From Guillardia theta CCMP2712 (lineage: Eukaryota; Protista; Cryptophyta), in the NCBI RefSeq assembly GCF_000315625.1, contig NW_005434653.1:267743-300464 (forward strand): DNA of 32,722 nt, in the 5' to 3' direction. The notes under the pieces were generated by a model. It was not told the DNA's origin. It ran no database searches and worked only from the letters and a program-made list of their open reading frames with translations. A program made the position numbers and the translations under genes. Numbering within the stretch: the stretch's first letter is position 1; each line of letters starts with the position of its first letter. Below, piece by piece: positions 4,826 to 31,184 of this stretch.

Positions 4826-4863
<38 letters not shown>

Positions 4864-5885: not shown

Positions 5886-5937
<52 letters not shown>

Positions 5938-6094
5938 ACTACTACTCCTACTCCTACTCCCACTCCTCTTCTTACTCCTACTCCTCTCTAACGACAGAAC
6001 TTACCAGATGCTGGTGCTGGACGAAGAAACCTCCAGGTCGATGGCTGGCAAGGAGGAGGCGAGGGATGTGTATGATAACTTCCACTCCAGGCCT
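2839..6094 (-). CDS. Multi-exon protein with a C-terminal Lin0512-family-like domain; 5' end lies in or near the assembly gap
   Basis: Spliced C-terminus reads VMHASFAQIQGMQHASE|AIRIAIMDAVAACREAFEGGEGRPDLLIKLHVGVPE|IMLHPLPDLGNLLDLFPHGVLLPVQ|FDVGGLYIPNAD|DPSNMSDNF|VIVVGLVLGE*. This matches the Lin0512 pattern (A..A..DA ... vGVP ... D...l...fP.G ... GGL ... terminal beta strand), recalled from memory. GT-AG junctions are phase-compatible and the stop is at 2839-2841. Upstream exons lie at ~4505-4790, 4950-5040, 5200-5350, 5631-5700 and 6005-6050. Confidence 0.65.
4826..4915. repeat. (GACGAG)n hexamer microsatellite in an intron
   Basis: Tandem gacgag/gacaag units are directly visible. Confidence 0.9.
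5880..5960. repeat. (CTG)n/(CTA)n/(CTCCTA)n microsatellite in an intron
   Basis: Directly visible. Confidence 0.9.
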
Positions 6095-6194
6095 NNNNNN
6101 NNNNNNNNNNNNNNNNNNNNNNNNNNNNNNNNNNNNNNNNNNNNNNNNNNNNNNNNNNNNNNNNNNNNNNNNNNNNNNNNNNNNNNNNNNNNNN
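6095..6194. other. Assembly gap (100 N)
   Basis: Run of N. Confidence 1.
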
Positions 6195-6292
6195 CCTCTC
6201 CCCCCTCCTCTCGCTCGACTTTCAGTCATCATCCTCTATCCTGCCCTAGTGATGCTTTGTTGCTTCACTTGCTCTACGCAACGTCCTCACGC

Positions 6293-7649
6293 TCAGATGA
6301 TCGTGACCTACACTTCATCTATCCCTCACCGCCTCCTCCTACTACTACTCCTACTCCATCTCTCCATCCTCCTCCTCCTCCTCACTTTGTAAGGGATCGC
6401 GTGCATCAACGCTCCCGGCTTAGCTCCGTCTGGAATTCTGCTCCATCCTCGTCAACAGCAGGCAAGAATTCTCAATCTGCTCTCACCTGACTTTGACCTG
6501 GGCAGGAGGCAGGTGCTCCTCAGCGTATCCCCGCTGCTTCCAGGCCTCGAGCTGGGTATCCGTGAAACCTGCGAGCAACTGAGCCTCCCGTGTCCTCCTC
6601 GTGCGAGGACGCGCTTGACCTGGGAGCGCTGGGAACCTCCCAACCATCTCCGGCATCATGTGCAGGAGCATGTTGATGTTGACCTTGCTCTCAGTCTTGT
6701 GGTGCAGGAGGCTGGGGAAGTGAACTTCTGCGACGTTGATCGACGTCTTCCCCTCTTCGTGCTTCCAGATCACAGGCTGACCCACAGCATCGTGACATTT
6801 CTGCAGCGCTCGTCAGCACGGGCCTTCTCCCAGCTCTCTTCTTCGCTCCATCCTCCCTCCCTCACTACCCATTCTGCTCCTCCTCCTCCTTCACCCTTCC
6901 CGATTCCCTTTTTCCAAAACCTCCCCACCATCTTCCGCTCTCCTTCCTGCATACCAGAATGATCCCCTCTCGTGCGCCTTCCGGCAGGACGGGGTTGACG
7001 ATGACGTTGGGTGTACATGCGCCGCTTTGAGATTTCTCGGTTCTGCTGCTGCTGTGCATAGAAGGCACATGCAGGTTGTTGCCTGTGCGATATGTTATCA
7101 TCTCTTTCTTACCTCTTCCTCGTCATGCTCCTCTTCCTCCTCCGATTCCTCTTCCTCTTCCCTTGCCCTCCTACCACTCCTTGTTGCTCTCCCCCCTGCC
7201 TGCCCCATACCCATTCCTTAATGCCTTCTCCCTTCTCTTCTCTCCCTCCCCTTCTTTTCTCCTCCCCCGCTATCCTCTCCTCTCTCCTCATCATCGTCTT
7301 CCATCTTCACCTCCTGTGAGGTTTGGAGTAGCATAAGGAGTATTGTTGGTGGAAGACACGTTGCTTCCTCCTCTTGATGATCCATGGAGCGCCTCCTCAA
7401 TGATTGCCTACGATTGTCATCATCAACATCATCATCTCCATCACCGCCAGCGCTGCTATCATCTCCATCTCCATCTCTAGCATCATCATCACCATCATCA
7501 TCTCATCATCTCCATCATCATTTTCTTCTTCTTCTTCTTCTTCATCTTCATCATCATCATCATCAATCGCCATCATCACCATCATCATCATCATCACCAT
7601 CATCATCACCATCATCATCATCATCATCAATCGCCATCATCATCATCAT

Positions 7650-7705
<56 letters not shown>

Positions 7706-7746
7706 CCACCACCACCACCACCACCACCATCATTTCCATCATCATT

Positions 7747-7785
<39 letters not shown>

Positions 7786-9057
7786 TCCATCATCTCCATC
7801 ATCATCGTCTTCATCGTCGTCGTCGTCGTCGTCGTCGTCATCATCATCATCATGAAAATGACCCCCACCATCTTCTTCTGTAAGTCATCACCTTTGGAAT
7901 CTCGAGCTTGATCTTCGTCCCTGGCCAGGCATTGGGAATCTTGAAGGTCATCGGACGAAGATTCACTGCAGGCATGTAAACGAAGGCTTAAGGGGGAGCA
8001 AGGAGCAGGGAGCAGGGAGCAGGGAGCAGGGAGCAGGGAGCAGGGAGCAGGGAGCAGGGAGCAGGGAGCAGGGAGCAGGGAGCAGGGAGCAGGGAGCAAC
8101 AAGAAGAGCAGAGGAAGTGAATGGTGAGGAGAAGGAGGATTGCCTGCAAAGCTGGAAGGATACCACGCTAGCTCGCCATCATCACGAGCGAGAAGAATCC
8201 AACCTCTGCAGAACCATGTCAAGGCTGAGGAAACGAAACCAGAAGGAGAAAATTCCTGCTGCCGGGTTTGACGAGCTTACAAACTTCGCCAGCAGCGATG
8301 ATACCTCCAGTTTCCTTGCTTCCGAACTGAAGAAAGGAGAGGGATCAAATTGGTTTGACAGGTCGGTTGTTCGACCCTTTACCTGCGTACGAGCCAGCAC
8401 AAGAGGAGGGAATTTTGCCATCTCTCCCGGAACGTGATCTGTTGACGTCATCAACAACGACAAGCTGAGGAAACAAGTCAAGACAGACAAACCCTCAGTC
8501 ATAGTGACGGTGATGATGAACTTCTTCTCATCCTGATTGTAGGCCGCTCAGCAAATTCGAAGGTAAGGAAAGACGAGCGAGGAAAGCGGTGGAGGACGGC
8601 AGAGGAGAGGATGGGAGGCAAACAGGCGGGGAGGAGGCACAAGAGGCACTGAGCCGCTTACTAACCATCTCATGGTGAATGGCCTCCTGGAGCAAAAGCA
8701 TCGACTTCTCAGAGCCTTGCGTGGAGAATCGAGCGAGGTCGAACTTGTTGTCATGCGAAAGCATCTCCGCGTTGCCGAAGTCAAAGCTCTTGACGTTCGA
8801 CGTCTTCGGGATGAGTTCAAAGTCATGTGACCTCGCTGGAGACGAGCCGTAGCTCCTGAACCTCCCTTGCTGCCAGCTCTGATCCAGCAGCCCTGGACTT
8901 CCATTCTGTGTTGATCCAGAAATGACCTGCTGTTGCTGGTTTGTGCTCGGATGAGACATAGGTAGATTCGGCGGATGCATCACGCTTGGATGAGGTACAT
9001 GCTGCGGCTGCAGCTGCGGCTGCGGTTGATGTTGAAACTGCTGCTGCTGATGTTGAA

Positions 9058-15124: not shown

Positions 15125-18100
15125 ATGATGGAGAGCACGCGGTCGTCGAGGGGGAGGATAGATGGGAGGCTCAGTCTGGAAGGCAGCTCCTCGAAGAACA
15201 GGTCGAGAGCGAGGAGCGAGACCAGCAGTCGCATGGGCGAGGCAGCAGGGGACGACATGCGAATAGACTGGATCAACGAAGCGGTCTGCTCGGCGTTAGA
15301 GTATGTCAAGCTCCCCGCCTCTTGCGCTGCTTAACACTTTGTGGTGCAGAATATCCCCCGACAGCTTTCAGAAGATGATGGAAGTGAGAGAAAACCGCGT
15401 TAACATTTATTCCTTTCTGGACCATACTAACAACATGAAGATATTCTTTATCAACGAGGAGGTTGAAGCTGGGTTCAAGCTCTTCTGTACCATAGACATC
15501 CCGATGGTCGAGCTCCTTCAAAGGTCTCGTTGCATCTGTTTCTTGAAGGAGGACACGGCCAAGGTACCCTACCATGACCCCGCCTCTATCCTCCTGTGGA
15601 TCGAGCTGAAGAGCTCTGTGTACGACGAGCTGTCAACCCTGTGCAAGGAAGTCTTCTTCCCTCTCTTCACGCTTCGGCATGATCACAAGGGGCTCAACAA
15701 CACCGCGATCAAGGAGTTTCCGATGCACCTCTCCGACTTCATCTGCTCTCTCGAAATCCTCAAGGGAAAGTCTCACAACTCCGTGGTGCTCCCCCTGCCC
15801 ACCGGTCTAGACTTTCAGAATTCAGATTCCTTCAAGCACAGGGCTGCGGTCACCCTGATGGAGAACACTGTGCTGTCCTGGACCAAGCAGATCCAATATT
15901 CCATCGCCAAGGACTCCGAAGACATCTCAGAGACATGCAAGTATCCTCTACCAAGCATGGGTGACCTTTGCTTTGCTCTCCTCCTCCCTCTGACACCTCG
16001 CGCAGAAATCGCTTTCTGGAGGTTTCGATCAGATGAGCTTGACTACATCTGCGCTCAACTCAATGACTCCAAGATCATAACCATCATCTCTCTACTTCGC
16101 AAATCCCAATCAACCTACTGCAATGCCTTCGATCTTGCTTCTCAAGGTAAACATCGCCTTCTCTCTCAGCCTTTCACTGACGCATCTCAGCTGCACGAAG
16201 CGCTGCCGAAGAGGCAAGAAGCAACTGCAAGGTGACTGAAATCTACTTCTTCTCCTCCCTCCCCCTCCCCTCCCTCCTCCTTTAGACACCACTACGGCAC
16301 ATCCCCTTCTCCCTCTCCTCTCATTCATTGACCTGTCCAATTTCTTCATCACAGCAGAGAGTGCTGAAAGGCGTGTCGTTGCAGTTCCTCCGGGGCATAC
16401 AAGACTCAGTCAACACACTTGAAAACCATCGCATAGAGGTCTCGAGAGACGAGGCTCCTGTCGAAGACTCCAACGACGTGATGCCCTCCGCGGACCGGAG
16501 CTTCACGGGAGCAGCGTTACCCGCCCTGCTGATCCTGGACGTCGGTTTCGACAAGGAGTGGGTTGCAGCCATGGCCAAGGCCATGCACATCTTGTTTCTG
16601 ATTACGGTTCACTCCCCCTACTACAACACATCTTCAAGACTTTCCACCTTCATTCGACGCCTGGAGAACGTAGCCATCATACAGACATCCAAGTACATTC
16701 TTCAGAAGGATGGCGTGGAGATACTGATCTCTGATCCTGTCGAAGCCATTCATCGACTTGAATCAAGCATTCAGATGTGCGTCAGCTTAAAAGACATGTT
16801 CGACGAGTACAAACAGAAATCTGTCGAACATTTCTCAGATCAGAAGGTAAATCCCTGGATTGCCAAAATGTCAGTCTTTGGGAAGTTAGATAGTTTTATT
16901 CAGAGGGCGCAGGATTTGGTGATCATGGCAAAGAATGCTTACGTTTACGAGAACCTCAAGACAACGATATTTGGAGGGATAAATGGATTGAAGACAACTT
17001 CCTGTGCGAGAGAAATACATCGAGATGTGATTGAAATGATATTTCATGTCATCCATGTACCATACGATCTGCTTGACATTGAAGTTCAACGAGAGTTCGA
17101 CGAGAAGATGAGTCAGTACACCGCAATGACAAAGTCTATTGAATTCCGGGCACTGTCTCTCCTACAACAGGTAGAGCGAGTCGCATGGCTTGTTTGAACC
17201 ATTCACTGACTGACTGCAGGTATTCGAAGACTGCAACAGCTCTGAGAGCATGCTCGACGCGTTCCTGCTGCTGGGTCCGATCCTGGAGCTTCAGAACATC
17301 AACTCGTACGCCGAGAAGATGATGGAGAAGGTGACTAGCGTGCTGCTTGCGGAGATACAGCATGCGCGCAACTCGTTCATCAACGAGGCACTCGAGACTG
17401 AGCTTCACTTTGCTTGCACCATCCCCAAGGTTTCGGCCAAGTGTCTGTGGGGAAAGGCGTTGAAGGAGAGGGTGAGCCGATCGATCAACAAGATGCGATT
17501 CATTGCTGGCATTCCAAACTCCTTCGGCTACATCCGAGAGGTGAGATCAGAGTTTGAATCGCTGTCAGTTGCCCTGGACAAGTACATCCAAGTGAACTAC
17601 AACAACTGGTTCAGTGAAATCCAGAATGGACCACAGTTTGAACTTGACTATCCTGTTCTCACAGTCTTGAGTGACAACAAGATCACGGTGAACGTAAACT
17701 ATTCTTTCTTTGAGACTTTGCAAGAGGCAAGAAGTTTTTCGAGGCTGGACTACAAGATCCCTCTCCGAATTCACGGATTTCTGGAGTTTTCGGATCAATT
17801 TCAGCTCCAAGTCTCCAAACTTTTTCTCATATCCGACATGTACAATACATTGCACGAGGCAAAAAATGATGCAGAATGGTTATTGATGTCGGAGAACTTG
17901 AAGCTGCTCGATGAGATGATCCATGATGTGAGCACCAACATCACATGGACAAGTTTCAAGTTGAACGAGATCATCGACGATCTTTTCATCGTTCTGAGGG
18001 AGAACCTTAATTTGAGTAGAAAACTGCTTGCTTGCGCGAAGGACATCACCAAAGTTTTCAATGGTTGGACTGAGTCAAAGTTGCTGTGGAAGAAGAAAGA

Positions 18101-21100
18101 AGAGGTGTATAGCCTGGAAGTGTTTGATGAGAAATATTGTGCTCGCATCAGTGAACAAGAAACAAGATTACGATCGGATCTATCTAACCTCTACGACATT
18201 GTCGATGAAATCAAAAGACTCAGTCTTCTAAATTCCACTTCCTCCATCTGGCAGAGATATTTCAGAGGGATGAAACAGACAATATCCTTCAACATGAAGA
18301 AGTTTGTGCTAAGAAGTATAGAGGAACTGCTGTCATATTTTGACGATCGAGATCTGCAAAATCATTCCTTCATTGAAATTTACATGGAGGTCCGAGAAAA
18401 GTGCATCACTTTCTCGCCGGAGATAGCTTCACGAGACAAGTTCTCAATCTTTCAGTGCTTTCAAAGGTGGAACGACAAGATTCTGGGCTTCATGAAACTA
18501 GTACATGACGATGAGATAGACCTTCACGACGACGACACAGCATTGTTAGACACGCAGATTGAAGGACAACAGACCCAGATCACAAAGCATCTGTCAATTG
18601 TTGAAACAAATCTTGAAAAGTTCGCAATGACACTGGAGGACTTCGGTTCCATCATCACTTCAGACAAAGAAGTCTTTGTCGATCAGCTTGTTAATCTTTC
18701 CACAAAAGGAAAGCACGTTGCTCCATTCCTCATCGAAAAATTTGAAGACTGCATTGAAAGCTTGAATCACAACAAATCCAAACTTGCTGAGATGAACAAC
18801 TTCTACGAGTGGAGTTGGATCAGGGTGAACTGTCAACCAGTGAAAGTCTTCATCGACCTGAGGATACAAGAAATCATCCACTACTGCACAGCATCCGTCT
18901 ATGAGTTGTTCTCCAAGACCCTCCGGGACATTGAGAAGTTTGTCACCTCGATGCTCCGAGAAATCAAACTCACTCTCGAGTCCGAGGGTGACAGGCAGCT
19001 GGCATTGACCAAGGTGAGAAGAGGCGTCGGGGCTGCTGGCCTGGTGACGAGCTTGGCAGGTGCTGAAGTTCAACATGGACATCAAGAACCACAGGCTGGA
19101 CCTCGAGGAGGGGCTCGAGTGGCTCCGCAACGCCAAGGATGCCATGGACGACCTAGACGTGCTGTCGGTGCCTGAGGACAAGGTGCGGCTGGTGAGCCTG
19201 ACGTCAGCATGGACGGACCTGCAGCACTCGATCGTGCAGATGAAGGAGTCGTTCGACCCTCTGATAGCGTCAGAGTCCAACGGGCTCAAGAGGATGTCGG
19301 AGAACGTGGCGGAGGAGCTGAGAAACCTCGAGACGGAGCTGAACTCCTCTGTGTTGTGGCACAAGGGATGCGCCGCGGGGGAGGCATACGAGCTGATCCA
19401 GAGCTTCTTCCAGCGACTGGAGAGGATCGAGACAAGGTCGATCATCCTCTGTGAGCTGAGGGACCTGCTAGAGACGACCATCTTCATCGACATCTCCGAC
19501 GTGGACGACTACAGGCGGCTGCTGCTGGCGTGCAAGAGCTTGTGGGACGTCAGAGAGATGGTTCTGACGGAGCTGAACTCGATCTACGAGAAGAGCTGGA
19601 AGGATGTCGACGTGGAACAACTTGAGCGAATGACGTCACAGTACGAGCAGATCATCAGCTCGACGGTTGACAGCAGCTTCCGCGAGTACGAGGTCTTCCT
19701 CGACCTTGAGGCACATATCAAGACGATTCGAAGCTCCCTGCCCTACCTGAAGCCCCTGATGGACGAGTCGATCAAAGAGCGACATCTCAAGTGGTTGATG
19801 GCTTGCTCCGGTCATTCGTTCTCCGTTCAAGGGAAGGTGGAGTTTAGCAACATCCTGCAACTCCAGTTGGACGTCTACAGCGATGAGTTCTTCTCGCTCT
19901 TGACCGAGTCAAAGAAGGAGCTGGAGGTAGAGAAGCTGCTTGCTGTCATAGAAGGCAAGTGGTCTGACATACACCTGTACTTCATCAACTCTCAAGACCT
20001 CTATGCAGACGTCATGACGGACTCGCTCATCAACGCGTTCGCTGCCATTAAGGACTTGCAGTCGGAGCTCCTGCAAGCTTCGGCTCTCCCCTGCACCAGC
20101 TTCTGCGAGCAACAGATCCAGGAAATGAACTTGAAGGTGCTGGACGCCGACAAGTTCCTGTGCCTGCTGCTGGAGATCCAGGAGAGGTGGACTATGGTGA
20201 GGAACCATAAGGTGTTCAAGGTGCTCAAGGAGGACGTTGTGTCTCTGCACGCCGAGCTGAGAAAATTCATCCTTCGGATCGAGACCAGGACGCTGCTCAA
20301 AGACATCTGCACATACCCTGACAAGCTCAGCGCCGCTTTCAACCTCATCCAACAGCTCAAGGAGCTGCAGACTCGCGTGTCGTCGGTCCTCCTGCAGAAG
20401 CGCCTCAACTGCCCGAGGCTCTTCATCCTCTCTGATGACGACGCAGTGCAGCTGCTGTCTCGTAGCATGCATGAGGTCCTGACCTGCACACACCTCAGCA
20501 AGATCTTTCATGGCATGAAGGACCTGCTCAAGGCCGACGAGTCCACTGAGTTCATCCTGACCTTGATCGGGGTGCAGACTGAGGCAGGAGAGAAGATAGA
20601 GTTCGAGGGTGACCACGTGTACTTCCGAAAGAACGATGCTGTCGATCGTCTCATCAATGACGTGGATGATAAGGTAGGTCACATGTCATGTGTAGACTGC
20701 GTCTTGACGTGTTGAAACCTGACTGCCTGCGACAGCTGAAGCTGTCGATCAAGATATCGGGGAAGCGAGCTGTGGAGGAGCTGCAGACCAGGAAGCTTCA
20801 CTCGCTCATGGAGGAGTTCTGCTTGCAAGTGATCCAGCTGGGGTACAAGATCAACTGGACGGGAAAGGTAGAGCAATGTCTGTACATGGAGGGCAGCGAG
20901 AGGGCTGTCTCCCTCAGGAAGGTAGCGCAGGAGTGCTCAGACGACCTCTCCCACCTCGTCAACCGCATCCGAGGAAACGCGAGCCTGAACCTCGAGGTCC
21001 GAAGGAAGCTCGCGGCGATGATCCCCTCGGTCGCATTCATGAAGGACGTGATCGAGTCTCTGCTCCAGCAGTCGGGCAGCAACGTCGCTGGCCTTCCCTT

Positions 21101-24100
21101 CGAGTGGCAGATGCAGCTGCGGTACTCCATGAGGAACGCGTCCAAGGACGAGCACCTGGCCTGTCGGCTGCAGATCGGGAGTGCGAGCCTCGACTATGGC
21201 AACGAGCTGGTCTCCCCGAGAGAAGCGTTCTACATCGCTCCTCCCACTCTCAGAGCCTTCTTCGGCATCATATCCGCCATCTACAGTAAGATGATCGTCG
21301 GGTTTCCTCAGAGGAAGGGGATAGGAAAGAAGGAGACGGTCTTGCAGCTCGCTGCTGCCTCGGGCTACACAGCGCAGGTTTGGAACTGCACACAGGACAC
21401 GCAAGTAGACTCGTTGTTTCCCCCCATCGTCTGCGCGTTCGCCACGGGGTCATGGCTGATCTATGAGAATTTTGAGAGTCTGAACGTCAACGTCAAGTAC
21501 AGCTTCCTTGCAAGCCTGAGCTCAGCAGTGTTGGCAGCGATAGCTGGACAGGACGCGAAGATATCAAGGATTCCCATCCGGTTCAAGCACCCCACGGGTA
21601 TATTTCTCTGCTTCGACTTTAGCCCTTCAGCCTACTCCCTCCCGAGCAGCATGAAGCCGATCCTCCGGTCGGTTGCGATCATCAAGCCGGACCTGCGCAC
21701 GCTGATACAAACCTTACTGCTGTCTGAAGGGTTTCAAAGTCACGACAAGCTGTCTCTGACCATCGTCAAGTACTGCCAGCTCTGTGCGCTGCTGATCCCC
21801 TCCTTGCCGCGCGAGGCTCTCAACGCGCGGTTCTTCAAGTCTCTCATCAAGCATTTCGTCGCCATCCTGCAGGCAGACCCGGTGAACAACAGCGAGGAGA
21901 TGATCATCGAGGAGGCGATTTTCCGGGCCCTCCGAGCCTTCGTCGACAACGAGTCCTTGGACCTCTTGCGTGCGGTCCATCGGCACGTCTTCACAGACGC
22001 TGAGCTGCTGCAGTTCCCGAAGCGTATCGACGACTTCACTGCTCACGTCAGCGAGAGCGACGACAACATGTCAACGTCTGCTCTCCGCAAGGTGAACGCG
22101 TTCAAGGCCGCCCTTGAAGTCGGCCGCATCCTCCACGTGTTTGGAGACCAGGGGACAGGCAAGTCGTTTGTGTGGAGAAGTGCGGCCAACCACATCCGAT
22201 CGACGGGGAGGAGAGTGCTATACCAGGGCCTTGACCCCAACATTACCAATCTCTCGCTTCCTGCGAGCTGCGGGTCAAACAGCAAGTTCTTTGACGTCGT
22301 CTTCAATCTCACCACCATGAGGCAGAGGGACAGAGTCTCGGAGGTAGAGAAGTGGCTTGTGCTGGACGGCATCATCTGCCCTGACTGGGTGTCCAACATC
22401 TGGTACACGTCGGAGGACATTGAGGTCAACAAGATCATCATTGAGACTAGCAGGCTGGACCATCACGCGCCCTCCATGCTCGCCAGCTCCGGCCTCATCT
22501 TCATAGACGAGGACACCTGCCCTCTCACTCACCTCCTCGAGCGATGGATCGACGGCCTGCCCCGTGACAACGTCAGGTCCGAGTTCCAGACTCTCTTCCA
22601 CACGCGGATCCCTCATCTCCTGCACCTCAAGGGACTGGACGTGAAACTGACCTACTCTCTCCCCCTCACCTTCCGCACCTGCTTCCTGACCTTCCTCCGT
22701 CTCATGGACAGCCTCGTGCGGGTGGAAGACTGGACGGCCAAGAGCGCAGTGGGCAAGAAGTGCTCCATCATCTTTGACTTCTCGGCAGCCTGGGGGTTTG
22801 GAGGAGCCCTGGTGGCCGACGGGTTCTCAGACAACAAGCGCGTCTTTCATGACTGGTGGCTGTCAAACATGCGAACGTTCGGGGGCAGCGAGATCGACTT
22901 CTCGGGAACGATCTTCGACTACACCTTCCACCCCGAGACGCTGGAGGTCATGTCGTGGAACGACCTGGTGCCGAGCACCAAGTTTGTAAGCGAGCTGGAT
23001 ACCCGAAGTATCATTATCTCCTCTCCCACTCAGATTGCCATCAACCGGTTGTTGTCGCTGCAGCTGACGTCCACCATCCACTTCCTGCTGGTGGGAGGAG
23101 GAGGAGTCGGCAAGAGCTCCATGGTCAGAGAGTTCCTGACGACTGTCTCCAACGACTGCTCCTGCTCTAGCATCTACTTGAACCGGGGGACCGACCACAG
23201 ACACCTGCAAGCTCAGCTGCAGAATCGGCTGAGCCAGAAGAAAGGCAACGTGCTGTGCCCTGCAGAAGGAAAGAAGGCAGTCTTCTTCATCGACGGCATC
23301 TCACATGTCAAGACACGAAAGAACTACCTGAACAGCGTTGTCTCGTTCCTCCACCAAGTGTCTGAGTACCGCACCTTCCTCGACGAAAGCGCACAGTCCA
23401 TGAACGAGATCGTCAACGTCCAGTACCTGGTCACCAAGACAGGCAGCCTGTCCATGAACAAAGACGACCACCAGCTCTTGACCAAGTTCGTCTGCATCTC
23501 GATCCCCTCCCCCACGTTCGAGACCGTCTACTCTATCTTCGTCTCCCTCATCTCCTCTCTCACCCAAGACTTCCTCGAGCCCGTTCAGAAGATCGTTGAG
23601 CCCTTGGGGAAGGCCCTGGCAGAGATCCACGGAAACCTGGTACAGACGTTCTGCAACTTCAAGTATCCCAACTACTGCCACTACTCCCTACACGACGTCT
23701 GCTCCTTCATCTCCGCGTTGTCGAGGGCTACCCCGGAGATCTACGACAAGCCTTCGCTGTACGTGAGCCTTTGGACGCAGGAGTTTGCCCTTGCGTACGG
23801 GGAGAGGCTGTCGAACAAGAAAGACAAGTACATCCTGCACGCTCTCATCAAGGAAGGGCTCGCAAAGTACCTGGAGTGCGAGAACAACGACGTCCAAGAC
23901 TTTGAGTCCATGCTTCACTTCAACGACATGGACAGCGGGACCATCTCACCCTGCAACCTTCCTCGTGACCACTGGAGAGCAGAGTTCGAGAAGAGGCTCT
24001 CGGAGTACAACTCCGTGTTCCCCAAGATCGATCTGCTCCTCTTCGACGAGTTTGTTGATCACCTGCTCAAGGTTCTGCACGCCATGAAGAAGTCGGACGG

Positions 24101-27100
24101 CCACATCGTCCTCTTCGGAGAGCACGGGTCGGGCAAGAGGAGCCTAGCCAAGCTCGCGGCGTTCTCGTTGGGGAAGGAGATCTCGATCCCGGACAAGTCA
24201 GGTGCTGTGAGCAGGAGGTTGCAAGGGAAGGGACTGACCGACATGTCAGGTGCTGTCTCTGACTTCCAGCAGGAGTTTCATCGGCAGCTGTTGAAGTCCT
24301 GGATCACCAACAAGGATGTAGCCATCATCGTCGACGACCAGTTGTCCGATAGAGACTACGCTGAGATCGAGCAGTTCATACAAGGGTCCTACGACTACAA
24401 CGACGAATGGCTCAAAGAAATCGTCAACGAGGACGCGCTGGAGAACGAGCAGCTGCTCAACGCTGTCGACTTCGGCTCGCTCAACAAGAAGGAGTCTCAG
24501 GCGTCAGTAGCGGTCAGACCAGCTGCTGACGTCAGAGACAACGTGCAGTTCCTCTTCTGCCTGTCCGTCGGGGGGCTGGAGGACCTCGCTCGCCACTTTC
24601 CCATCATTCCCCACAGCTCGTACCTCAAGTACCTGGGAGCCTGGAGCCAGGAGTCTCTAAATGAGATCTCGGAGAAGAAGGCGCTGGCGGTGCGAAACTC
24701 GAGCTACGGGGCCTTCTTGTCCTCGGAGTACTCGCTGGTCCAGTTCAGCCTGTTCGCTTTCTCCAGGGCGTCCCGAATGGCTCAGAGCAAGAGAAACAAG
24801 CTCACCAACTTCCCCCCCTTCTACTTCGTTGAGTTCCTGGACTTCTTCAATCGTATCTTGTCGGCTGAGAGCGAACGGCGGGAGAAGGAGAGGTCGGCTC
24901 TGATCAAAATCCTCTCCAATGTGGAAGAGCTGAATGCCAAGATTGACCAGCTGAACAGAGATCAGGAGAAGAAGAAGGAGGAGCTCGCCCAGCAAGAGAG
25001 CTCCGTCGAGAAGCTGATCGTTGAGCTGGGAAAGATCTCGGGGAACCTGGAGCATCACAAGAAGCAGTTCGACGAGACGGTAGACAAGATCAGGCAGAAG
25101 GAGCTTGTCATCTCAATGTCAAAAGCTGACATGGAGGAATCTCAGTCGCTCATGCAATCGTCCATGAACTTCGTGGCAGACTCCGTGAGGAGTCTCGACA
25201 AGAAGAAGCTGTCGGAGATCCGTTGGGTCTCCTCGCCCTCCCAGGCGACAGAGAAGGTCCTGGCGTGCTGCGTGATAGTTCTGAGTCAGAAAGGTGTGCA
25301 TGCATGCTCGTGAAGCAGTCCCTGACTTGTTTGCTCGCAGATCGCGATGGCTGGTGGGATGTGAGCTGGAACAAGTCGAGGAAGATCGTCGATCAGGATC
25401 AGTTTGTCTCGGTTCTTGCCGACTTGTCCCTTAACAAACTCACTCCGGACGTCATGCAAGCGCTTCGAGTCCACGTAGAGGAGAAGGAGAATATCAGCAG
25501 AACTCTTGCTGAGCTGCCTGAGCCCGAGACTCATCTGGTGGGGGTGTGGCAGTGGGTGTGCATGTTGTACGAGTACAAGCAGGTGTTCGACACCAGCATC
25601 GCTCCCAAGATCGCCACCTACCAGTCGGCCACCCTCGACAAGGAGCAGCTGGACAGGACAAGAGCTGAGAACGAGGAGCTGATCGCGACGCTCAAGGTCG
25701 AGCTCGCCTCGGTGTCGGAGCGCTACGAGAACCTGACGATTCAGATCTCGGAGCTCAGCAGGGACATCGAGGCGAACGCAGTGGTGCAGAGAAGCTGCGG
25801 GCAGTTCCTGTCAGACTTGAGCAACCAGGTGAGCCACTGGAAGACAAGGCATGCCAACATCGAGAGCGGCATGAAGACCTGCGTCGGCCAGTGCCTCCTC
25901 GCCAGCGCCATGGTGACGTACACGGGGCTGCTGAGCGAGAAGCAGCGGCATCAGTACCTGGAGGTGGAGTGCAAGGAGAAGATGAGGCTGGTGAGCATCA
26001 GGTTCGAGGAGGAGAAGTCGGCCATGGAGACGCTGGTACAGCCGTCGGAGTACGAGAAGTACTTCATGGAGGGATGGGCGGGGATGAACTGCGACAGCGT
26101 GTACCCCTGGGCCCTTGAGAACATGTGCATCGCTGACAAGTGCGTGCGATTTCCCGTGCTGATCGACCCAGACCTCTTGTGCCTGCCATGGCTGGCGAGC
26201 ATGGAGCGAGATGGGAAGGGAGTGCTGATCAGAGACGTGGAGTTTGTGAAGAAGACCCAAGGGATCAAGCTGTGCGTCGCGTCGGGACAGACGTTGATGA
26301 TCAAGTCGAACGAGGCAAGTCTAGACAGGTCGCTGAGGAAGATACTGCTCAAGAACACAATCAAGAAGGGCAAGACAACCTTCTTGGACGCGGGCTTCGA
26401 GTGGGTCGAGTACAACCCCTCCTTCCAGCTTGTCTTCACCACTACCGCCCATGACTTTGACGTGTCGAGCGCCGTGCACGCGAACTGCATCAGCTTCGAG
26501 GCCGGGGAGGAGCACATCACGCAGCTGCTGCTGGAGGAGGAGCTGCTGATCCGAGACGAGTCGAGCTTCCACGAGTTCAAGCAGACCTCCTACTCCTCCA
26601 TCTCCTGTCTGAGCGAGTACACCAACCTCGAGCGAGCCATCATGCACCAGACTGAGTTCCTGGACGCGTTCCTGCTCTCCGACGGGCAGCCAGTCTTGAG
26701 TGCCAGGAACGAGTACCTGAGGCTTGACAGGATGAAGAAACGAACGGTGGAGGTGGAGGAGGGGATGACGCGAGTGAAGAACAAGCTCAGGTCACACCTG
26801 CAGTCTATCCGCCTCATCGCCTCCATCTGGCTGCTCATCAAAAGGTTCCAAGACCTGGACTCAAGCTATCAGTTCTCGTTGAACCTCTTCCTCCGCGTCA
26901 TCAAGGTCTTCCTGACGGTCAAGACAGGTGACGACGTGTACAAGGAGAGGAAGATCCTGCTGGACAACATCGTCTACTACCTCCTTCCCGGCCTCCACCA
27001 GGACCACCGGCTTCACTTCCTCCTCAGCTTCTACTTCATGACCGAGATCGCTAACGGAGGGCTCTCTCGAGACTTCTGCAGTCGCTACATCTTCAACCCA

Positions 27101-29143
27101 CAAACCGAGGAGGACGGCAACGAATGCTTGATCGACTTGAGCCTCGGCAAGCTCGCGGAATTTGCCATGCAGCAGCAGCAGGAATGCTCCTGCTTGCTGC
27201 AAGACATGAAGGAGGGCGAGAAGAAGTTGATGGAACAGGCGACAAATTGTGCGGACGTCCATCAGCACATCATGTCGTCTCTTGTGGACGAAGACGTCAC
27301 ATCCAGCGAGCACTTGAACAATTTCTTCAAGCGGCACCTTGAAGCCTCCCTGGTCCTGGAGGCCAAGGACAGCAGGCAAGCCCAGCAGCCCCTCCTTGTC
27401 TCCTTCCTCTGCAACTCACCCGAGGAAGTCGACGATTTTATCTACATGTACAGGATCGTCGAGCTGGGAAAGCAGCTCAAGAAGCAGCTCATCCCCTTGA
27501 GCACAACATCTGACGGGTTTTCAAAGTCCCTCCAAGAGTCGCTGCGACGAGGAGACTGGATCCTTGTAAGGGACCTCCACCTGGATCAACAGATCCAGCA
27601 TCAGTTCTGCGACTACATCCTCGACCTCTACTCCTCCTCCTCCTCCTCCTCCTCCTCCTCCTCCTCCTGCTCCGTCGTGTTTGTCGAGCTGCTGCAAGTG
27701 ACCTCGAAGCTCCACTTGATCCTACGCAACTCCATTAAGGTCCGAGACTTCTATCAGCCCCAGGGCATACGAGCCAGGTACGGCAGGTACGACCAGGTCC
27801 TACTGGAGGACGGCAGCACAGCTCAGCGCTCTCAAGCTAGGCTCGTCAACTTGCTACACTCTGTCCTGGTTGCGTTCCAGGGGCTGATGAGGAGGAGCGA
27901 GTCCGGCTCCATGAGCTCGAGCAGGGTCGGGGTCGAGGATCTCGAGTCTGCACTTGTCCTCCTCGAGTCAGGGAGCAGGCAGCCGCCCATGGAGAGGGTG
28001 GCGGACTTGATTTACGGCCACAAGCTGGACTCCAGCTCGTCTCAGGCTCTCCAAGGGTTATGGGAAATGATCTTGTCTTGCCAGAGGAGCGGCGAGGGAG
28101 AAGATGGAGGGCAGGCGGCGGCGGAGCAGCAGCAGCTGGAAAGTTACCTGGACAGGTTGGCGGAGAGGTTGGAGGAGAGCCTGTTCGGGCAGATGGAGGG
28201 GAGCTTGCAGGAGGTTGAGGGGACGGAGGAGCTGTGGAGAGCAGCTGGAGGGTTCAGGGACATGGTGGTGGAGAAGGTAGCGGGGATCAAGGATGTGGTC
28301 TCCCTGGCCACCATCGACCATGACAACCTGGTGGGGGAGATGACGTACGCGGGGACCGACAGGATGCTGCTGCTGCACGCCATAGCGACCGAGTGTGCGA
28401 TCCTCAACGCGCTGAGAAGTGAGATGGCGAGGAACTTTGACATCCTCGACAAGGTGATCATGCGCAGCGGCCTCCTGTCCACGTCAGCAGCTGAGAACGC
28501 GCTGAGGCTCGCAGAGGAGCTGCTGCGGGACCGAGTCCCGGCGCACTGGGTCCGCTCCTCCTTCCCCTCCAGCCAGTCGCTCGGCCCGTGGCTTCTGAAC
28601 CTCAACGAGAGGATGGAGCAGTGCAAGCGATGGGCGCAGAAGCCTCCCGAGCTCCTCGAGCGCCTGAGCATGCACGTTCTGTGCCGCCCTGCGACCTTCA
28701 TAGGAGCCCTCGCCATCACCCGCAACCTCAAGGTGTGGAAGGAGGACAAGGTCGTGCTGCAGTGCCGAGTAGCAGACGAGGATGATGATGATGATGATGA
28801 TGAGGAGGAGGACAAGGAGGAGCAGCAGCAGAACAAGGAGGAGCAGGAAGAGGAGCAGGAGGAGGAGCAGGAGTACATCGAGATCGACGGTCTCGAGCTA
28901 GACGTGCTGGGATGGGACGAAGGGTTCAGCCTTGGGAGCGAGGAGAAACAGCTTCCCCCCCTCGTCCTGAGCGCTTGGCAGGAGGATGTACCCCCCTCCG
29001 ACGTGCTCCTCCCTGTCTTCCAGGGCCTTCGCGACCCCTGGGGCCCCATGTGCTTCCTAAGCCTGAAGAGAAGATGGCGGCCGAAGGACACGATCCTACG
29101 GTCGGTTCTAGCACTAGCCTCTGTGCATACAGAGAGTGCGTGA
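15125..29143 (+). CDS. Dynein heavy chain, axonemal outer-arm-like architecture, highly divergent
   Basis: Tail (PLPSMEIAFW...QL; EARSNCKFL), linker (KELEVEKLL...W; KRLNCPRLFILSDD), AAA1 (FEWQMQLRY, YGNE, GKKETV, GSW, KPDL), AAA2 GDQGTGKS, AAA3 GGGGVGKS, AAA4 GEHGSGKR, coiled-coil stalk and MTBD (LDKKKLSEIR...SWNKSRK), AAA5 (RFPVLIDP, VEYNPSFQL, YQFSL), C-terminal RVPAHW...SLGPWLLNLNERMEQ. Introns: 15301-15349, 15961-16005, 16147-16190, 16232-16384, 17171-17219, 19014-19059, 20674-20735, 24202-24249, 25294-25340. Further 5' exons may exist in 14730-15120. Confidence 0.95.
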
Positions 29144-29330
29144 GGAGGAGGGAGGGAGTTGAAGGAGAGGAGGAGGAGGAGGAGGAGGAGGAGGAGGAGG
29201 ATGAGAAGGAGGAGATGATGATAACAAGGACAAGGAAGAGGATGATGATGAAGATGAGAACTATGATGGCATGAACGAGATGGTGTTTGTTGTTGTCTTG
29301 TTGTCAACTGCAGGAATGAAGAGAAGCAAC

Positions 29331-31184
29331 TCAAGTTGTAGCTCGAAACTCTTCTATCACTCTTCTCAGCGAGTCCAGCGCAGGCCCTTCTGGTGGCTGC
29401 GGCAACATTAGAGGAGACAGGAGGAGAGAAGCAGGAGGAGAGGAGCAGGAGGAGAGGAGCAGGAGGAGAGGACAACAGCAGTACAAGAAGACGGAAGCGA
29501 GGAGGAGTATGGATAGCACGAGGAGGAGGAAATATGTTGAGAAGCCCGACGAGGATGAGGAAGACGAGGAGAAGGAGAGAGGAAGGAGAAGACAGAGGGA
29601 GAGGAAGGGGAAGGGGGGGGGGGGGGGAGAAGACCGAAGGACAGGAGAGAGAAGGAACCTGAGAGAGGGTTAAGTTTAGCTCGAAAGTGTCGATCAGTTG
29701 TCTCGCTCTGCTCGCCCCTTCGTTCCTCGCCGAGCTCGAACCTCCTTGACCTCCCAGCTCTTCCCCCCTGTACCAGATATCACAACTCCTCCTCCTCCTC
29801 CTCCTNNNNNNNNNNNNNNNNNNNNNNNNNNNNNNNNNNNNNNNNNNNNNNNNNNNNNNNNNNNNNNNNNNNNNNNNNNNNNNNNNNNNNNNNNNNNNNN
29901 NNNNNAACGCGAAACGCAACGAAAAAACAGAGGCTACTGCTCCTCCTCCTCATCCTCCCCTCGTCTACTTCGGATCCCACTTACCATCCTTCATCCTCGT
30001 GTGCTTCCTATTGCACTCACCGCATAAGCGAGCTGTACAAGCCCTGCCGCATTCTGAGCTCGTTCGGCTCCCCCCACTCTGTTCGTGCAATCAGAAAATT
30101 TTAGTAGGGTAAGGAAGAGGAGAGGAGAGAAGAGAAGAGAGGAGAGGAGATGACGCAGGAGCAGGAGCAGGAGCAGGAGCACGAGAGGAGAGGAGAGGAG
30201 AGGGGAGGAGAGGGGAGGAGAGGAGAGGGGAGGAGAGGAGAGGGGAGGAGAGGAGAGGGGGAAACAGGATTGGAAAGCATACAGTCGGGGGAGCGAGGAA
30301 GGGAAGAGGACGAGACTAGCCGTGTGAGGGGATGATGAAGGGACGACGAAATGTCAACTACCTTCGATCCTTCCATGCACGAGAACGCCGACCTTGTTGG
30401 CCGCCTGACCCCAGAGGAGAGGAGAGGAGGAGGTAGAGATAACCTGCAAGGTCGTCATGGAATGCTGAGAGAAAAGGAGGAGAGGGAGGAGGACGATGGT
30501 GTAGAGGGAATGGGGGGAAGGGAGGAATAGACAAGAAACTGACCGTCTTCCCCGGAATAATCTCTTGCAGAATCTCGTAGAGCTGAGAACAAGATCAATG
30601 CCTCTGCTGCAGAGGAGGGAGGAGGGAGGAGCGAGGAGGAGGGCGATGAGAGCAAAGGAGGAGGAGGAGAGGAGGGAAGGGTAAGTAGCAAAGAACCTCT
30701 GCGCGAGAAGATTCTGGCAGAGAGGAGCCAAAGTCGTCGATCAGCCAGATGGAGCAATCCTTTGCAACAGCTCTGAAATGCACAGATGTCACAAGGACTT
30801 CAACATCTTCTTCCTTGGCCTCTTCGCTACCGAGTCCTCCTATCCTCATTCTTCCTCCTCATCTTCAAGTTCCTTGTGTGCCTTGTCCCCGTATCACGGG
30901 TCCCTGCCCCTTGCCCCTTGCCCCTCTCCTCCTCCTCCTCCTCCTCCTCCTCCTTCTCCCTTCCATGCTTTGCTTCCTTCCAATCTCACTCTTCTCACCG
31001 AGCAATCGCGATCTTGTGCTGCATCATTTGCGAGAGCTGCACGTCTCTCCTCCTCCTCTCGCCCTTCTCTTCGCTGCTCTCCACCAGTGTGTCGTACGCG
31101 TCCGGTAGTCTGAGAATCGGCTGGTGCAACTTCGCGACTTTGGCCGCCTGAGGATCATTATCATCATCATCGTCATCATCATCG

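What the first reader, a model, noticed from the sequence alone, without database searches (positions are those of the whole stretch)
21290..22500. Full-length dynein heavy chain with an apparently dead AAA1 site: candidate pseudo-motor or microtubule tether
Seen: AAA1 Walker A reads GFPQRKGIGKKET (21300-21338; consensus GPAGTGKTET). Walker B reads WLIYENFE (21453-21476; consensus WGCFDEFN, catalytic Glu replaced by Asn). Sensor I reads GIFLCFDF (consensus GIFITMNP). The AAA2 arginine finger serving AAA1 reads APSMLASSG (Ser at 22485-22487; consensus SPATVSRCG). Established: AAA1 is the principal hydrolysis site driving the power stroke. The ~4,500-codon frame is nonetheless open, and the tail, AAA2-4 P-loop lysines, stalk and MTBD are retained. 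Inference: a selected non-motile dynein acting as a structural crosslinker, brake or regulator in the flagellum, analogous to the degenerate animal DNHD1 but possibly independent.
Basis: partly seen in the sequence, partly recalled or inferred. Interest (0 to 1): 0.8.

Follow-up and report, generated by a model that had tools for sequence, protein, structure and literature searches.

The report
Expressed outer-arm-type dynein, dead motor site
This alga (reportedly the cryptophyte Guillardia theta) transcribes and splices a full-length flagellar dynein heavy chain gene whose main ATP-burning site has lost every catalytic residue, so it is most likely a non-motile structural or regulatory "pseudo-motor", a kind so far described only in animals.

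Summary
The + strand carries a seven-exon dynein heavy chain (DHC) gene (15303-29143, 4,486 codons, six introns of 46-128 nt). Alignment with canonical DHCs shows every reported AAA1 change at the stated coordinates:
- Walker A: GPAGTGKT to QRKGIGKK
- Walker B: DE to EN
- sensor I: Asn to Asp
- AAA2 arginine finger: Arg to Ser

In addition, about 15 residues at the AAA2 pre-sensor-I insert are missing, and the AAA3 Walker B and sensor I are degenerate.

The gene is not a dead copy. Spliced RNA contigs of about 12 kb from two studies match it without a mismatch. The frame is intact, and GC3 is 0.8 against GC2 of 0.3-0.4.

The tail and motor are closest to outer-arm dynein beta, and trees nest the gene in or beside that clade on an extreme branch. 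No orthologue turned up (best hit 25% identity among 1.84 billion representatives).

Conservation relative to canonical DHCs is highest in the N-terminal tail (0.83) and lowest in AAA1 (0.40).

Best reading: a selected, non-motile outer-arm-type DHC, functionally analogous to animal DNAHX/DNHD1 but of separate, beta-type origin.

Earlier scan notes, which I did not check, report at least five more dead-AAA1 DHC genes elsewhere in this genome.

The parts
15303..29143 (+). Whole gene: seven-exon dynein heavy chain CDS, 4,486 codons plus stop
   Evidence: ORF pieces and open frames. Pfam finds DHC_N1, DHC_N2, AAA_6, AAA_7, AAA_8, MT, AAA_9 and Dynein_C in order. The assembled CDS has one terminal stop.
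15303..19013 (+). Tail, exons 1-3 (15303-16231, 16360-17170, 17220-19013), of outer-arm beta type
   Evidence: Best PDB sequence matches are outer-arm beta chains, starting at residue 15 of the query against residue 31 of Chlamydomonas beta. The 5' ends of the RNA contigs fall about 4-22 nt upstream of ATG 15303. Relative conservation is 0.83 for residues 1-580.
16232..16359 (+). Intron 1 (128 nt, predicted only)
   Evidence: It is the only GT..AG pair that joins the two frames without a stop.
17171..17219 (+). Intron 2 (49 nt, predicted; GTAGAG...CTGACTGACTGCAG)
19014..19059 (+). Intron 3 (46 nt, predicted; AAG|GTGAGA...GGCAG|G)
19060..20673 (+). Exon 4: end of tail and linker (DHC_N2)
   Evidence: Pfam DHC_N2, 147 bits
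20674..20735 (+). Intron 4 (62 nt), spliced out in RNA contigs
   Evidence: Joint in the contigs of runs X3 and X4; sequence.
21300..21338 (+). AAA1 Walker A region GFPQRKGIGKKET. The first Gly becomes Gln, the Lys is kept, and the Mg-binding Thr becomes Lys.
21453..21476 (+). AAA1 Walker B WLIYENFE. Asp becomes Glu and the catalytic Glu becomes Asn.
21597..21620 (+). AAA1 sensor-I strand GIFLCFDF. Asn becomes Asp, and the following PGYAGR loop is replaced.
21828..21830 (+). AAA1 sensor-II arginine (R2081), retained
22143..22166 (+). AAA2 Walker A GDQGTGKS, intact
22422..22433 (+). Site where about 15 residues of the AAA2 pre-sensor-I region (canonical KVLTLxxxERIxL) are missing
   Evidence: MAFFT alignments. 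The genome is collinear with the RNA contigs here, so this is not a missed exon.
22485..22487 (+). AAA2 arginine-finger position: Ser instead of Arg
23094..23300 (+). AAA3: Walker A GGGGVGKS is intact. Walker B FFIDGI has its second acidic residue replaced by Gly, and the sensor-I Asn is lost downstream.
24117..24140 (+). AAA4 Walker A GEHGSGKR, intact
24202..24249 (+). Intron 5 (48 nt, in frame, no stop), spliced out in RNA contigs
24861..25972 (+). Stalk coiled coil and microtubule-binding domain, interrupted by intron 6
   Evidence: Pfam MT. The alignment shows canonical length and a retained W...PK motif at the start of CC2.
25294..25340 (+). Intron 6 (47 nt), spliced out in RNA contigs
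26111..26639 (+). AAA5 (Pfam AAA_9)
27631..27673 (+). (CTC)14 microsatellite, which encodes a poly-Ser tract in AAA6. Both RNA contigs break here.
28052..28979 (+). C-terminal domain (Pfam Dynein_C), with an acidic GAT/GAG-repeat tract at 28781-28877

Best explanation
Shown:
- This is a real, transcribed, correctly spliced gene for a 4,486-residue dynein heavy chain.
- It descends from the outer-arm beta family (Kollmar class 4; DNAH9/11/17 type).
- It has diverged enormously, to about 22% identity with any other dynein.
- Every element needed to hydrolyse ATP at AAA1 is replaced: the Walker A Thr and first Gly, the Walker B Glu, the sensor-I Asn and the AAA2 arginine finger.
- About 15 residues are missing from AAA2 at the position of the pre-sensor-I insert.
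- AAA3 has lost its second Walker B acid and its sensor-I Asn.
- Structural residues are kept: the P-loop Gly-x-Gly-Lys, the sensor-II Arg, the AAA2-AAA4 P-loops, the stalk, the MTBD and the C-terminal domain.
- The N-terminal tail is almost as conserved as it is among working dyneins.

Inferred:
- From general knowledge of dynein mechanics, not from a paper read here, the AAA2 pre-sensor-I insert takes part in linker remodelling. Its loss would further disable the motor.
- The protein cannot run the ATP-driven power-stroke cycle.
- Through its beta-type tail it is probably built into an outer-arm-type complex with intermediate and light chains, in place of or next to the canonical beta chain.
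- Its head would then act as a passive, nucleotide-independent or nucleotide-locked element that reaches the neighbouring doublet through the retained stalk and MTBD.
- That would make it a static cross-bridge, brake or waveform modifier, possibly limited to one of the two unequal flagella or to one zone of them.
- Selection now acts on assembly and architecture, not on catalysis.
For: Gene and architecture:
- Pfam domains appear in canonical order.
- The CDS model has a single stop.

Dead AAA1:
- The changes are seen in the alignment to 7kzm_B and to 12 canonical DHCs.
- The query keeps 46 of 124 near-invariant AAA1-AAA2 columns, against 120-121 in canonical DHCs.

AAA2 and AAA3:
- The AAA2 deletion and the AAA3 degeneracy are seen.
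- The genome is collinear with the RNA across the deletion.

Expression:
- Contigs of 11,978 nt (run X3) and 11,965 nt (run X4), from two studies, lack introns 4-6 at GT..AG borders and show zero mismatches over 19401-25400.
- Five raw RNA-seq reads from run X14 also map.

Maintained coding sequence:
- There is no stop in 4,486 codons, while the other frames carry 76-228 stops.
- GC3 is 0.59-0.88 against GC2 of 0.27-0.41 along the whole gene, including AAA1.

Fold:
- The AAA1-AAA2 module is still predicted to fold as a dynein AAA pair (pLDDT 82.9).
- The best Foldseek matches are outer-arm dyneins.

Beta-type origin:
- PDB matches for the tail and AAA1 are outer-arm beta chains.
- The best hits of the exhaustive search are DNAH11 and protist proteins that cluster with solved outer-arm beta chains.
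- The gene sits in a clade with the outer-arm sequences (support 100, 99).
- It nests inside that clade when the other long branches are removed (95).

Pattern of constraint:
- Identity relative to canonical-versus-canonical is 0.83 for tail residues 1-580, 0.40 for AAA1L and 0.52-0.64 for the rest of the motor.

Precedent:
- Animal DNAHX has a degenerate AAA1, is non-motile and sits in a heterodimeric complex. DNHD1 lacks the Walker B residues (bioRxiv 10.1101/2025.01.18.633724).
- Kollmar 2016 argues that orphan DHCs keep the tails of canonical classes and so occupy axonemal positions (PMC5100056).
Against: - There is no orthologue, so no dN/dS and no test of long-term retention of this particular gene.
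- There is no localisation or proteomic evidence.
- Expression in the one raw-read RNA run is very low: 5 reads in about 6% of the run.
- The P-loop Lys, two Gly and the sensor-II Arg are kept, so nucleotide binding cannot be excluded. The head might be ATP-locked, with weak microtubule binding as in DNAHX, which would argue against a tether.
- MTBD residues are divergent, and microtubule binding is untested.
- Three of the six introns and the last 1.5 kb of the CDS have no RNA support in what I laid.
- The extreme branch (5-8 substitutions per site) makes any tree position uncertain.
Confidence: 0.6

Rival explanations
1. Transport or assembly chaperone of the DNAHX type. The head is locked in an ATP-bound, pre-power-stroke, weakly microtubule-binding state. 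It pairs with another heavy chain in a phi-like autoinhibited particle for delivery into the flagellum, rather than acting as a fixed tether in the axoneme.
For: - The Walker B Glu-to-Asn change resembles the classical hydrolysis-dead, ATP-trapping Glu-to-Gln mutation (general knowledge, not read here).
- The P-loop Lys and Gly residues and the sensor-II Arg are kept.
- DNAHX has a degenerate AAA1, holds ATP and forms phi particles with a second heavy chain.
- The dimerising N-terminal tail is the best conserved part.
Against: - The Walker A Thr-to-Lys change, the loss of the first P-loop Gly, the sensor-I Asn-to-Asp change and the loss of the Arg finger all remove phosphate or Mg contacts, which makes stable ATP binding doubtful.
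- None of the DNAHX hallmarks is present. There are no insertions in the stalk-MTBD or AAA4S, the length is normal at 4,486 aa, and the affinity is beta-type rather than alpha-type.
Confidence: 0.2
2. Functionless decaying duplicate: a paralogue of outer-arm beta that is still transcribed but drifts neutrally.
For: - Extreme divergence and the most degenerate AAA1-AAA2 of all sequences compared.
- No orthologue detected.
- Very low read count in one RNA-seq run.
- Simple-sequence tracts inside the CDS.
Against: - Divergence to about 22% identity needs far more time than a 13.5-kb frame can stay open by chance. The other frames carry 76-228 stops.
- All six introns keep GT-AG borders, and three are proven to be spliced.
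- A strong GC3/GC2 contrast persists.
- Conservation is patterned, with tail above motor above AAA1, not uniform.
- The module is predicted to fold confidently.
Confidence: 0.1
3. Still an active motor. ATP turnover would occur at a non-canonical AAA1, or be driven from AAA3/AAA4, with altered mechanics.
For: - The AAA2-AAA4 P-loops are intact.
- Linker, stalk, MTBD and C-terminal domain are all present.
- Kollmar 2016 proposed that orphan dyneins have new force-production characteristics.
Against: - From general knowledge of dynein mechanics, AAA1 hydrolysis is required for motility in all dyneins studied. Here five catalytic elements are lost at once.
- AAA3 has also lost its second Walker B acid and its sensor I.
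- The AAA2 pre-sensor-I region is missing.
Confidence: 0.05
4. Non-axonemal structural role, for example anchoring cytoplasmic microtubule roots or the rhizostyle, independent of outer-arm partners.
For: The retained stalk and MTBD with a dead motor would suit any static microtubule anchor. There is no direct evidence for flagellar localisation.
Against: The tail aligns from its first residues with outer-arm beta tails, which carry the sites for dimerisation and intermediate-chain binding, and it is the best conserved part.
Confidence: 0.05

Closest known systems
Outer-arm dynein beta heavy chain (Chlamydomonas ODA-beta, Tetrahymena beta, human DNAH9/DNAH11/DNAH17; Kollmar class DHC4)
   Same: - Same domain order and nearly the same length.
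- The tail aligns from the N-terminus.
- These chains give the best sequence matches for the tail and AAA1-AAA2, and they are the nearest clade in the trees.
   Different: - Identity is only about 22%.
- The AAA1 catalytic residues and the AAA2 arginine finger are lost.
- About 15 residues at the AAA2 pre-sensor-I insert are missing.
- AAA3 is degenerate.
- The branch is 5-8 substitutions per site, against 0.5-1 for canonical members.
DNAHX / dynein-X of sea urchin and other externally fertilising animals (bioRxiv 10.1101/2025.01.18.633724)
   Same: A full-length DHC with a non-conserved AAA1 site, presumed non-motile, derived from an outer-arm heavy chain, with its tail retained for complex formation.
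   Different: - DNAHX branches from outer-arm alpha (DNAH5/8 type), is about 5,270 aa long, and has insertions in the stalk-MTBD and AAA4S.
- DNAHX keeps Walker B and is reported absent from protists.
- The gene here is beta-type and 4,486 aa, has no insertion longer than 27 residues, has lost Walker B, and has a deletion in AAA2.
DNHD1 (animal 'orphan' DHC, Kollmar class 11)
   Same: A divergent DHC that lacks the catalytic Walker B residues of AAA1. It was long regarded as a ghost gene but is functional in cilia and sperm, as cited.
   Different: - It is metazoan-restricted according to Kollmar 2016.
- No DNHD1 sequence was available to me, and none was recognised among the best 150 hits.
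- The gene here groups with outer-arm beta.
Unclassified ('orphan') Guillardia theta dyneins of Kollmar 2016 and the holozoan classes 12/13
   Same: - Kollmar reports Guillardia dyneins that group basal to classes 12/13, whose tails resemble outer-arm classes 3 and 4.
- In my tree this gene groups with an ichthyosporean (Chromosphaera) and a Hanusia divergent DHC, beside the outer-arm clade.
- This gene is probably one of those orphans.
   Different: - That paper states that the ATP hydrolysis sites were not analysed.
- I could not check identity with a particular CyMoBase entry.
- The grouping of long branches may be an artefact.

Membership tests
Dynein heavy chain superfamily | Tail (DHC_N1), linker (DHC_N2), AAA1-AAA6 ring, coiled-coil stalk with MTBD between AAA4 and AAA5, and a C-terminal domain, in that order | tested here: met
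   Pfam hits above the curated cut-offs, in order, on consecutive exons. The alignment covers the full length against canonical DHCs.
Outer-arm dynein beta (DHC4; DNAH9/11/17) | N-terminal tail homologous to beta-type tails | tested here: met
   For residues 1-309, seven of the eight best distinct sequences are chains named outer-arm beta or DNAH17/DNAH9; the top one is an unnamed Leishmania chain (9y6s_5c) that also scores close to DNAH9/17 when an outer-arm beta hit (P0005) is searched against PDB. For residues 581-1178, the top five are DNAH17 and Tetrahymena beta chains. E-values are 1e-11 to 1e-13.
Outer-arm dynein beta (DHC4; DNAH9/11/17) | Motor domain falls inside the beta clade in a phylogeny | tested here: inconclusive
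   With four other long branches the gene is sister to the clade (99). Without them it nests inside (95). The branch is 5-8 substitutions per site, so the position is unsure. Clade identity was checked through PDB matches of P0005 and P0031.
Outer-arm dynein beta (DHC4; DNAH9/11/17) | Catalytically competent AAA1 (GPAGTGKT, DE, sensor-I Asn, AAA2 Arg finger) | tested here: not met
   All four elements are replaced.
DNAHX (dynein-X non-motile subfamily) | Branches from outer-arm alpha (DNAH5/8 type) | tested here: not met
   Best matches and tree neighbours are beta type. DNAH5 and Chlamydomonas gamma score lower. No DNAHX sequence was in the tree.
DNAHX (dynein-X non-motile subfamily) | Extended length (about 5,270 aa), with insertions in the stalk-MTBD and AAA4 small domain | tested here: not met
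   The protein is 4,486 aa. The largest insertion relative to canonical DHCs is 27 residues, in the tail, and stalk length is canonical.
DNAHX (dynein-X non-motile subfamily) | Non-conserved AAA1 motifs | tested here: met
DNHD1 (class 11) | Orthology to animal DNHD1 | not tested
   No DNHD1 sequence was returned by any tool. Kollmar 2016 restricts class 11 to metazoans.
Processed or decaying pseudogene | Frame disruptions, loss of splice sites, no transcription | tested here: not met
   One terminal stop in 4,486 codons. Borders are GT-AG, and three introns are removed in RNA contigs.

The most novel reading that the evidence does not exclude
The gene may be one member of a whole set of motor-dead dyneins in cryptophytes. 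Scan notes report at least five more in this genome, and Hanusia phi expresses one.

Together with similar genes in an unidentified 40%-GC eukaryote (L001) and in the ichthyosporean Chromosphaera, these could form an ancient sister lineage of the outer-arm dyneins.

On that reading, non-motile 'dynein-X-like' heavy chains would not be an animal invention. They would be an old, repeatedly retained component of eukaryotic flagella that standard annotation files as ordinary dyneins.
Probability: 0.15. Interest if true: 0.8.

Novelty: new variant of a known kind. Interest (0 to 1): 0.58.

Why it matters
Dynein motility depends on ATP hydrolysis at AAA1. Heavy chains that keep the whole 0.5-MDa architecture but give up that site were recognised only recently, in animals (DNAHX, DNHD1), and DNAHX was reported absent from protists.

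This gene is an expressed, beta-type example in a cryptophyte alga. It shows that the same outcome arose from a different parent chain and by different structural changes, including loss of Walker B and a deletion at the AAA2 insert.

If the tail still docks it in the outer arm, cryptophyte flagella would contain built-in passive heads. That bears on how waveform and the asymmetry between the two flagella are set.

It also warns that counting dynein genes by domain annotation overestimates the number of working motors.

Tried and rejected
Searches for an orthologue all failed:
- The word search with the AAA1-AAA4 exon gave one unrelated 20%-identity hit.
- The exhaustive HMMER search of 1.84 billion representatives gave at best 25% identity, and the window's own protein did not appear.
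- The word search with the last 700 residues found nothing.
- The scan of JGI metagenome contigs found nothing.
- The profile search with the four long-branch relatives returned only canonical dyneins.

So dN/dS could not be computed.

I considered P0017 (locus L001) and Hanusia P0124 as orthologues and rejected both:
- Identity is 20-22%, no better than to canonical beta chains.
- The tail of L001 is 19% identical.
- Neither shares the AAA2 deletion.
- L001 comes from a 40%-GC genome.

Other checks:
- I checked whether the AAA2 deletion or the dead motifs could come from a wrong gene model. They cannot, because the RNA contigs are collinear with the genome from 20736 to 24201.
- I checked whether the RNA contigs ending near 27.64 kb meant a truncated transcript. 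They stop at a (CTC)14 repeat longer than the assembler's word, so this is an assembly break.
- Neighbouring ORFs gave no Pfam hit and no help with context.
- Supplements of Kollmar 2016 are not held, so the gene could not be matched to a named orphan.
- Looking up the scan's findings by sequence returned nothing.
Full report
**What is in the window**

The + strand between 15.3 and 29.1 kb holds six long open stretches in alternating frames. Their translations hit, in order, Pfam DHC_N1, DHC_N2, AAA_6, AAA_7, AAA_8, MT, AAA_9 and Dynein_C, all above the curated cut-offs. The scores are unusually low for a dynein: AAA_6 reaches only 95 bits.

I laid four public runs on 19401-25400. Two contigs of about 12 kb, from two different studies (X3 of 2014 and X4 of 2018), match the genome without a single mismatch. 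They skip 62, 48 and 47 nt with GT..AG ends (sequences). Because they are spliced, they are RNA-derived. A raw RNA-seq run (X14) gave only five reads from the 6% of the run that was read.

The three remaining frame changes are each explained by one short GT-AG intron:
- 16232-16359, the only solution that joins the frames;
- 17171-17219;
- 19014-19059.

The resulting CDS has seven exons and 4,486 codons with a single stop at the end.

The contig lengths place the 5' ends of the transcripts about 4-22 nt upstream of ATG 15303. The first residues align with the first residues of outer-arm beta tails, so the start codon is credible.

Both contigs end at a (CTC)14 microsatellite at 27631-27673. 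This is an assembly break, and it also shows that there is no intron between 25400 and 27631.

**Checking the observation**

Their identification does not rest on eye alone. phmmer against all PDB chains aligns them to Chlamydomonas outer-arm beta. MAFFT alignments with canonical DHCs give the same columns.

| Element | Canonical | This gene |
|---|---|---|
| AAA1 Walker A | GPAGTGKTET | QRKGIGKKET (first Gly lost, Lys kept, Mg-coordinating Thr to Lys) |
| AAA1 Walker B | CFDEFNR | IYENFES (Asp to Glu, catalytic Glu to Asn) |
| AAA1 sensor I | ITMNPGYAGR | LCFDFSPSAYS (Asn to Asp, loop and its Arg replaced) |
| AAA1 sensor II | Arg | Arg kept (R2081) |
| AAA2 arginine finger | ATPATVSRAG | HHAPSMLASSG (Arg to Ser) |

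I found two further defects:
- About 15 residues are missing at the conserved KVLTLxxxERIxL segment of AAA2, the pre-sensor-I insert. The stretch is collinear with the RNA contigs.
- AAA3 keeps its P-loop, but its second Walker B acid is replaced (FIDD to FIDG) and its sensor-I Asn is lost.

The AAA2, AAA3 and AAA4 P-loops are intact. The stalk and MTBD have canonical length, with recognisable landmarks.

In numbers, 124 AAA1-AAA2 columns are at least 90% conserved in 58 canonical DHCs. The gene keeps 46 of them, canonical sequences keep 120-121, and other degenerate dyneins keep 51-114.

**Is it a live gene?**

Several independent features say yes.
- It is transcribed, and three introns are demonstrably removed.
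- The 13.5-kb frame has no internal stop, while the five other frames of the same DNA carry 76-228 stops.
- Codon-position structure is strong everywhere, including AAA1 (GC3 0.78-0.88 against GC2 0.30-0.41 in the motor). A sequence drifting neutrally to about 22% identity would have lost this.
- Divergence is patterned. Relative to identity among canonical DHCs, tail residues 1-580 retain 0.83, the linker 0.64, AAA2-AAA6 and the C-terminal domain 0.52-0.64, and the AAA1 large domain only 0.40. AAA1 is normally the best conserved part of any dynein.
- With an alignment of 70 sequences, AlphaFold2 predicts the AAA1-AAA2 pair with mean pLDDT 82.9. Foldseek returns outer-arm dyneins first. This prediction leans on the canonical rows of the alignment, so it is weak support.

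**What it descends from**

- PDB sequence searches with the N-terminal tail, the middle tail and AAA1-AAA2 all put outer-arm beta chains on top: Chlamydomonas and Tetrahymena beta, DNAH9 and DNAH17.
- The exhaustive search of 1.84 billion representatives found 1,929 proteins at E up to 0.001. None is more than about 25% identical over the AAA1-AAA4 exon.
- The best named hits are a fish protein annotated DNAH11 and unnamed full-length DHCs of Fabomonas, Willaertia, a cercozoan, Mantamonas and Phytophthora. The Willaertia one (P0005) matches DNAH9, DNAH17 and Chlamydomonas beta best in PDB.
- A FastTree of 124 sequences puts the gene in a 52-row clade with these sequences (support 100).
- An IQ-TREE run under LG+C20 on 39 sequences puts it beside the outer-arm clade (99). 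There it sits with three other long-branch, AAA1-degenerate dyneins: P0017 from a metagenomic eukaryote, P0039 from the ichthyosporean Chromosphaera perkinsii, and P0124 from the cryptophyte Hanusia phi.
- With those three removed, the gene nests inside the beta clade (95).
- I confirmed that this clade is class 4 (beta plus the third, kelch-tailed outer-arm chain) from PDB matches of two members.
- The terminal branch is 5-8 substitutions per site, so I treat 'derived from outer-arm beta' as well supported. I treat the four-member long-branch group as unresolved.

**Relatives**

I found no orthologue.

P0017 lies on a 23-kb contig (L001) as a full-length gene of about 4,480 aa with short introns. 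It has lost Walker A, Walker B, sensor I and the Arg finger. However, it is only 19-22% identical, keeps the AAA2 insert, and comes from a 40%-GC genome. Hanusia P0124 is equally distant. I therefore do not call either an orthologue.

A caveat applies. The window's own protein did not appear in the exhaustive search. Either this gene is not in that collection, or such entries are hidden. In the second case a cluster-mate could be hidden as well.

**Context from the scan and the literature**

Earlier follow-up notes name the genome as Guillardia theta. I did not verify this independently.

Other first-reader notes list at least five more DHC genes with degenerate AAA1 elsewhere in this genome, and one note on the AAA2 insert in this same gene. 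I confirmed the AAA2 deletion. I could not see the other genes.

Kollmar 2016 (PMC5100056) makes three relevant points:
- It already lists unclassified Guillardia dyneins that group basal to the holozoan classes 12 and 13.
- It notes that orphan dyneins keep the tails of canonical classes and should therefore sit at the corresponding axonemal positions.
- It states that ATP sites were not analysed.

Chai et al. (bioRxiv 10.1101/2025.01.18.633724) describe DNAHX:
- It is an animal-specific, non-motile offshoot of outer-arm alpha with a degenerate AAA1.
- It has large insertions and forms a phi-like heterodimer.
- They report it absent from protists.
- They point out that DNHD1 also lacks Walker B.

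**How it most likely works**

Shown: AAA1 lacks every residue known to be needed for hydrolysis and for the trans-acting activation from AAA2. Part of AAA2 is missing at the pre-sensor-I insert. The tail, AAA2-4 P-loops, stalk, MTBD and C-terminal domain are retained. That the AAA2 insert contacts the linker is my own knowledge of dynein structures, not something I read here.

Inferred: the protein cannot perform a power stroke. Because its beta-type tail is the most constrained part, it probably still dimerises and binds intermediate and light chains. It would then be placed in an outer-arm-type complex, where its head acts as a passive element.

Whether the head is nucleotide-free (strong microtubule binding, a tether or brake) or nucleotide-locked (weak binding, as in DNAHX) cannot be decided from sequence.
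- The loss of the Mg-binding Thr, the first P-loop Gly and the Arg finger, together with the Asn-to-Asp change, favours an empty or weakly occupied site.
- The kept Lys, Gly and sensor-II Arg, and the Glu-to-Asn change, leave ATP trapping possible.

I give the non-motile structural or regulatory reading 0.6, the transport-chaperone variant 0.2, neutral decay 0.1, an active unconventional motor 0.05 and a non-axonemal anchor 0.05.

**Novelty and verdict**

The existence of odd Guillardia dyneins and the concept of non-motile heavy chains are both published, so this is not categorically new.

What is new:
- documentation of a completely dead AAA1, with AAA2 and AAA3 defects, in an expressed protist DHC;
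- its beta-type origin, distinct from the alpha-type DNAHX;
- the pattern of constraint, which points to the tail as the selected part.

I rate it a new variant of a known kind, with interest 0.58.

Noticed in passing
window 15303-19013 versus 19060-29143: Third-position GC steps from about 0.60 in exons 1-3 (tail, codons 1-1200) to 0.78-0.88 in exons 4-7. The change falls at the exon 3 / exon 4 intron. It could reflect a chimeric origin of tail and motor or a local compositional boundary.
   Followed up: no
window 15961-16005: A possible extra in-frame intron of 45 nt (GTGACC...CTGAC...CGCAG, pyrimidine-rich). It coincides with a 9-residue insertion relative to canonical tails. It was not covered by the reads I laid. 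If real, the protein has 4,471 residues.
   Followed up: partly
window 27631-27673, 28781-28877, 29142-29214: Trinucleotide repeats lie inside and just after the CDS. (CTC)14 encodes a poly-Ser tract in AAA6 and breaks both RNA contigs. GAT/GAG repeats give an acidic tract near the C-terminus. More GAG repeats follow the stop.
   Followed up: partly
window 20674-20735, 24202-24249, 25294-25340: The proven introns are very short (47-62 nt). Each has a CTGAC motif 12-20 nt before the 3' AG, which looks like a branch-point consensus. One intron is in frame and free of stops, so it is invisible to ORF scanning.
   Followed up: partly
L001 4649-18277: An ENA metagenome contig from a 40%-GC eukaryote carries another full-length DHC of about 4,480 aa. 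It was called as three pieces, has short introns, and has lost Walker A, Walker B, sensor I and the AAA2 Arg finger. Its 90% cluster has 19 near-identical members.
   Followed up: partly
protein P0124 (EukProt, Hanusia phi): Hanusia phi, reported as a cryptophyte related to Guillardia, expresses a 3,701-aa DHC fragment with a degenerate AAA1 (PRGIGKQAA, WALF-EV, no sensor-I Asn). It is only about 20% identical to this gene and may correspond to one of the other dead-AAA1 genes noted in this genome.
   Followed up: partly
run X9 (freshwater metagenome, 2023): A freshwater metagenome holds 38% of the 31-letter words of 19000-25400, that is, near-identical DNA of what the scan's notes call a marine alga. 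This may be contamination or a close freshwater relative.
   Followed up: no
window 28144-29919 minus strand: A 591-aa antisense ORF overlaps the 3' end of the gene. It has no Pfam hit and is probably a by-product of the high GC3 of the sense strand, since the antisense frame 0 has few stops.
   Followed up: partly
window 1000-9000: There are strong alternating GC and AT skews (for example GC skew -0.44 at 1001-2000 and +0.34 at 4001-5000), and long ORFs on both strands without Pfam hits. The nature of this region is unknown.
   Followed up: no
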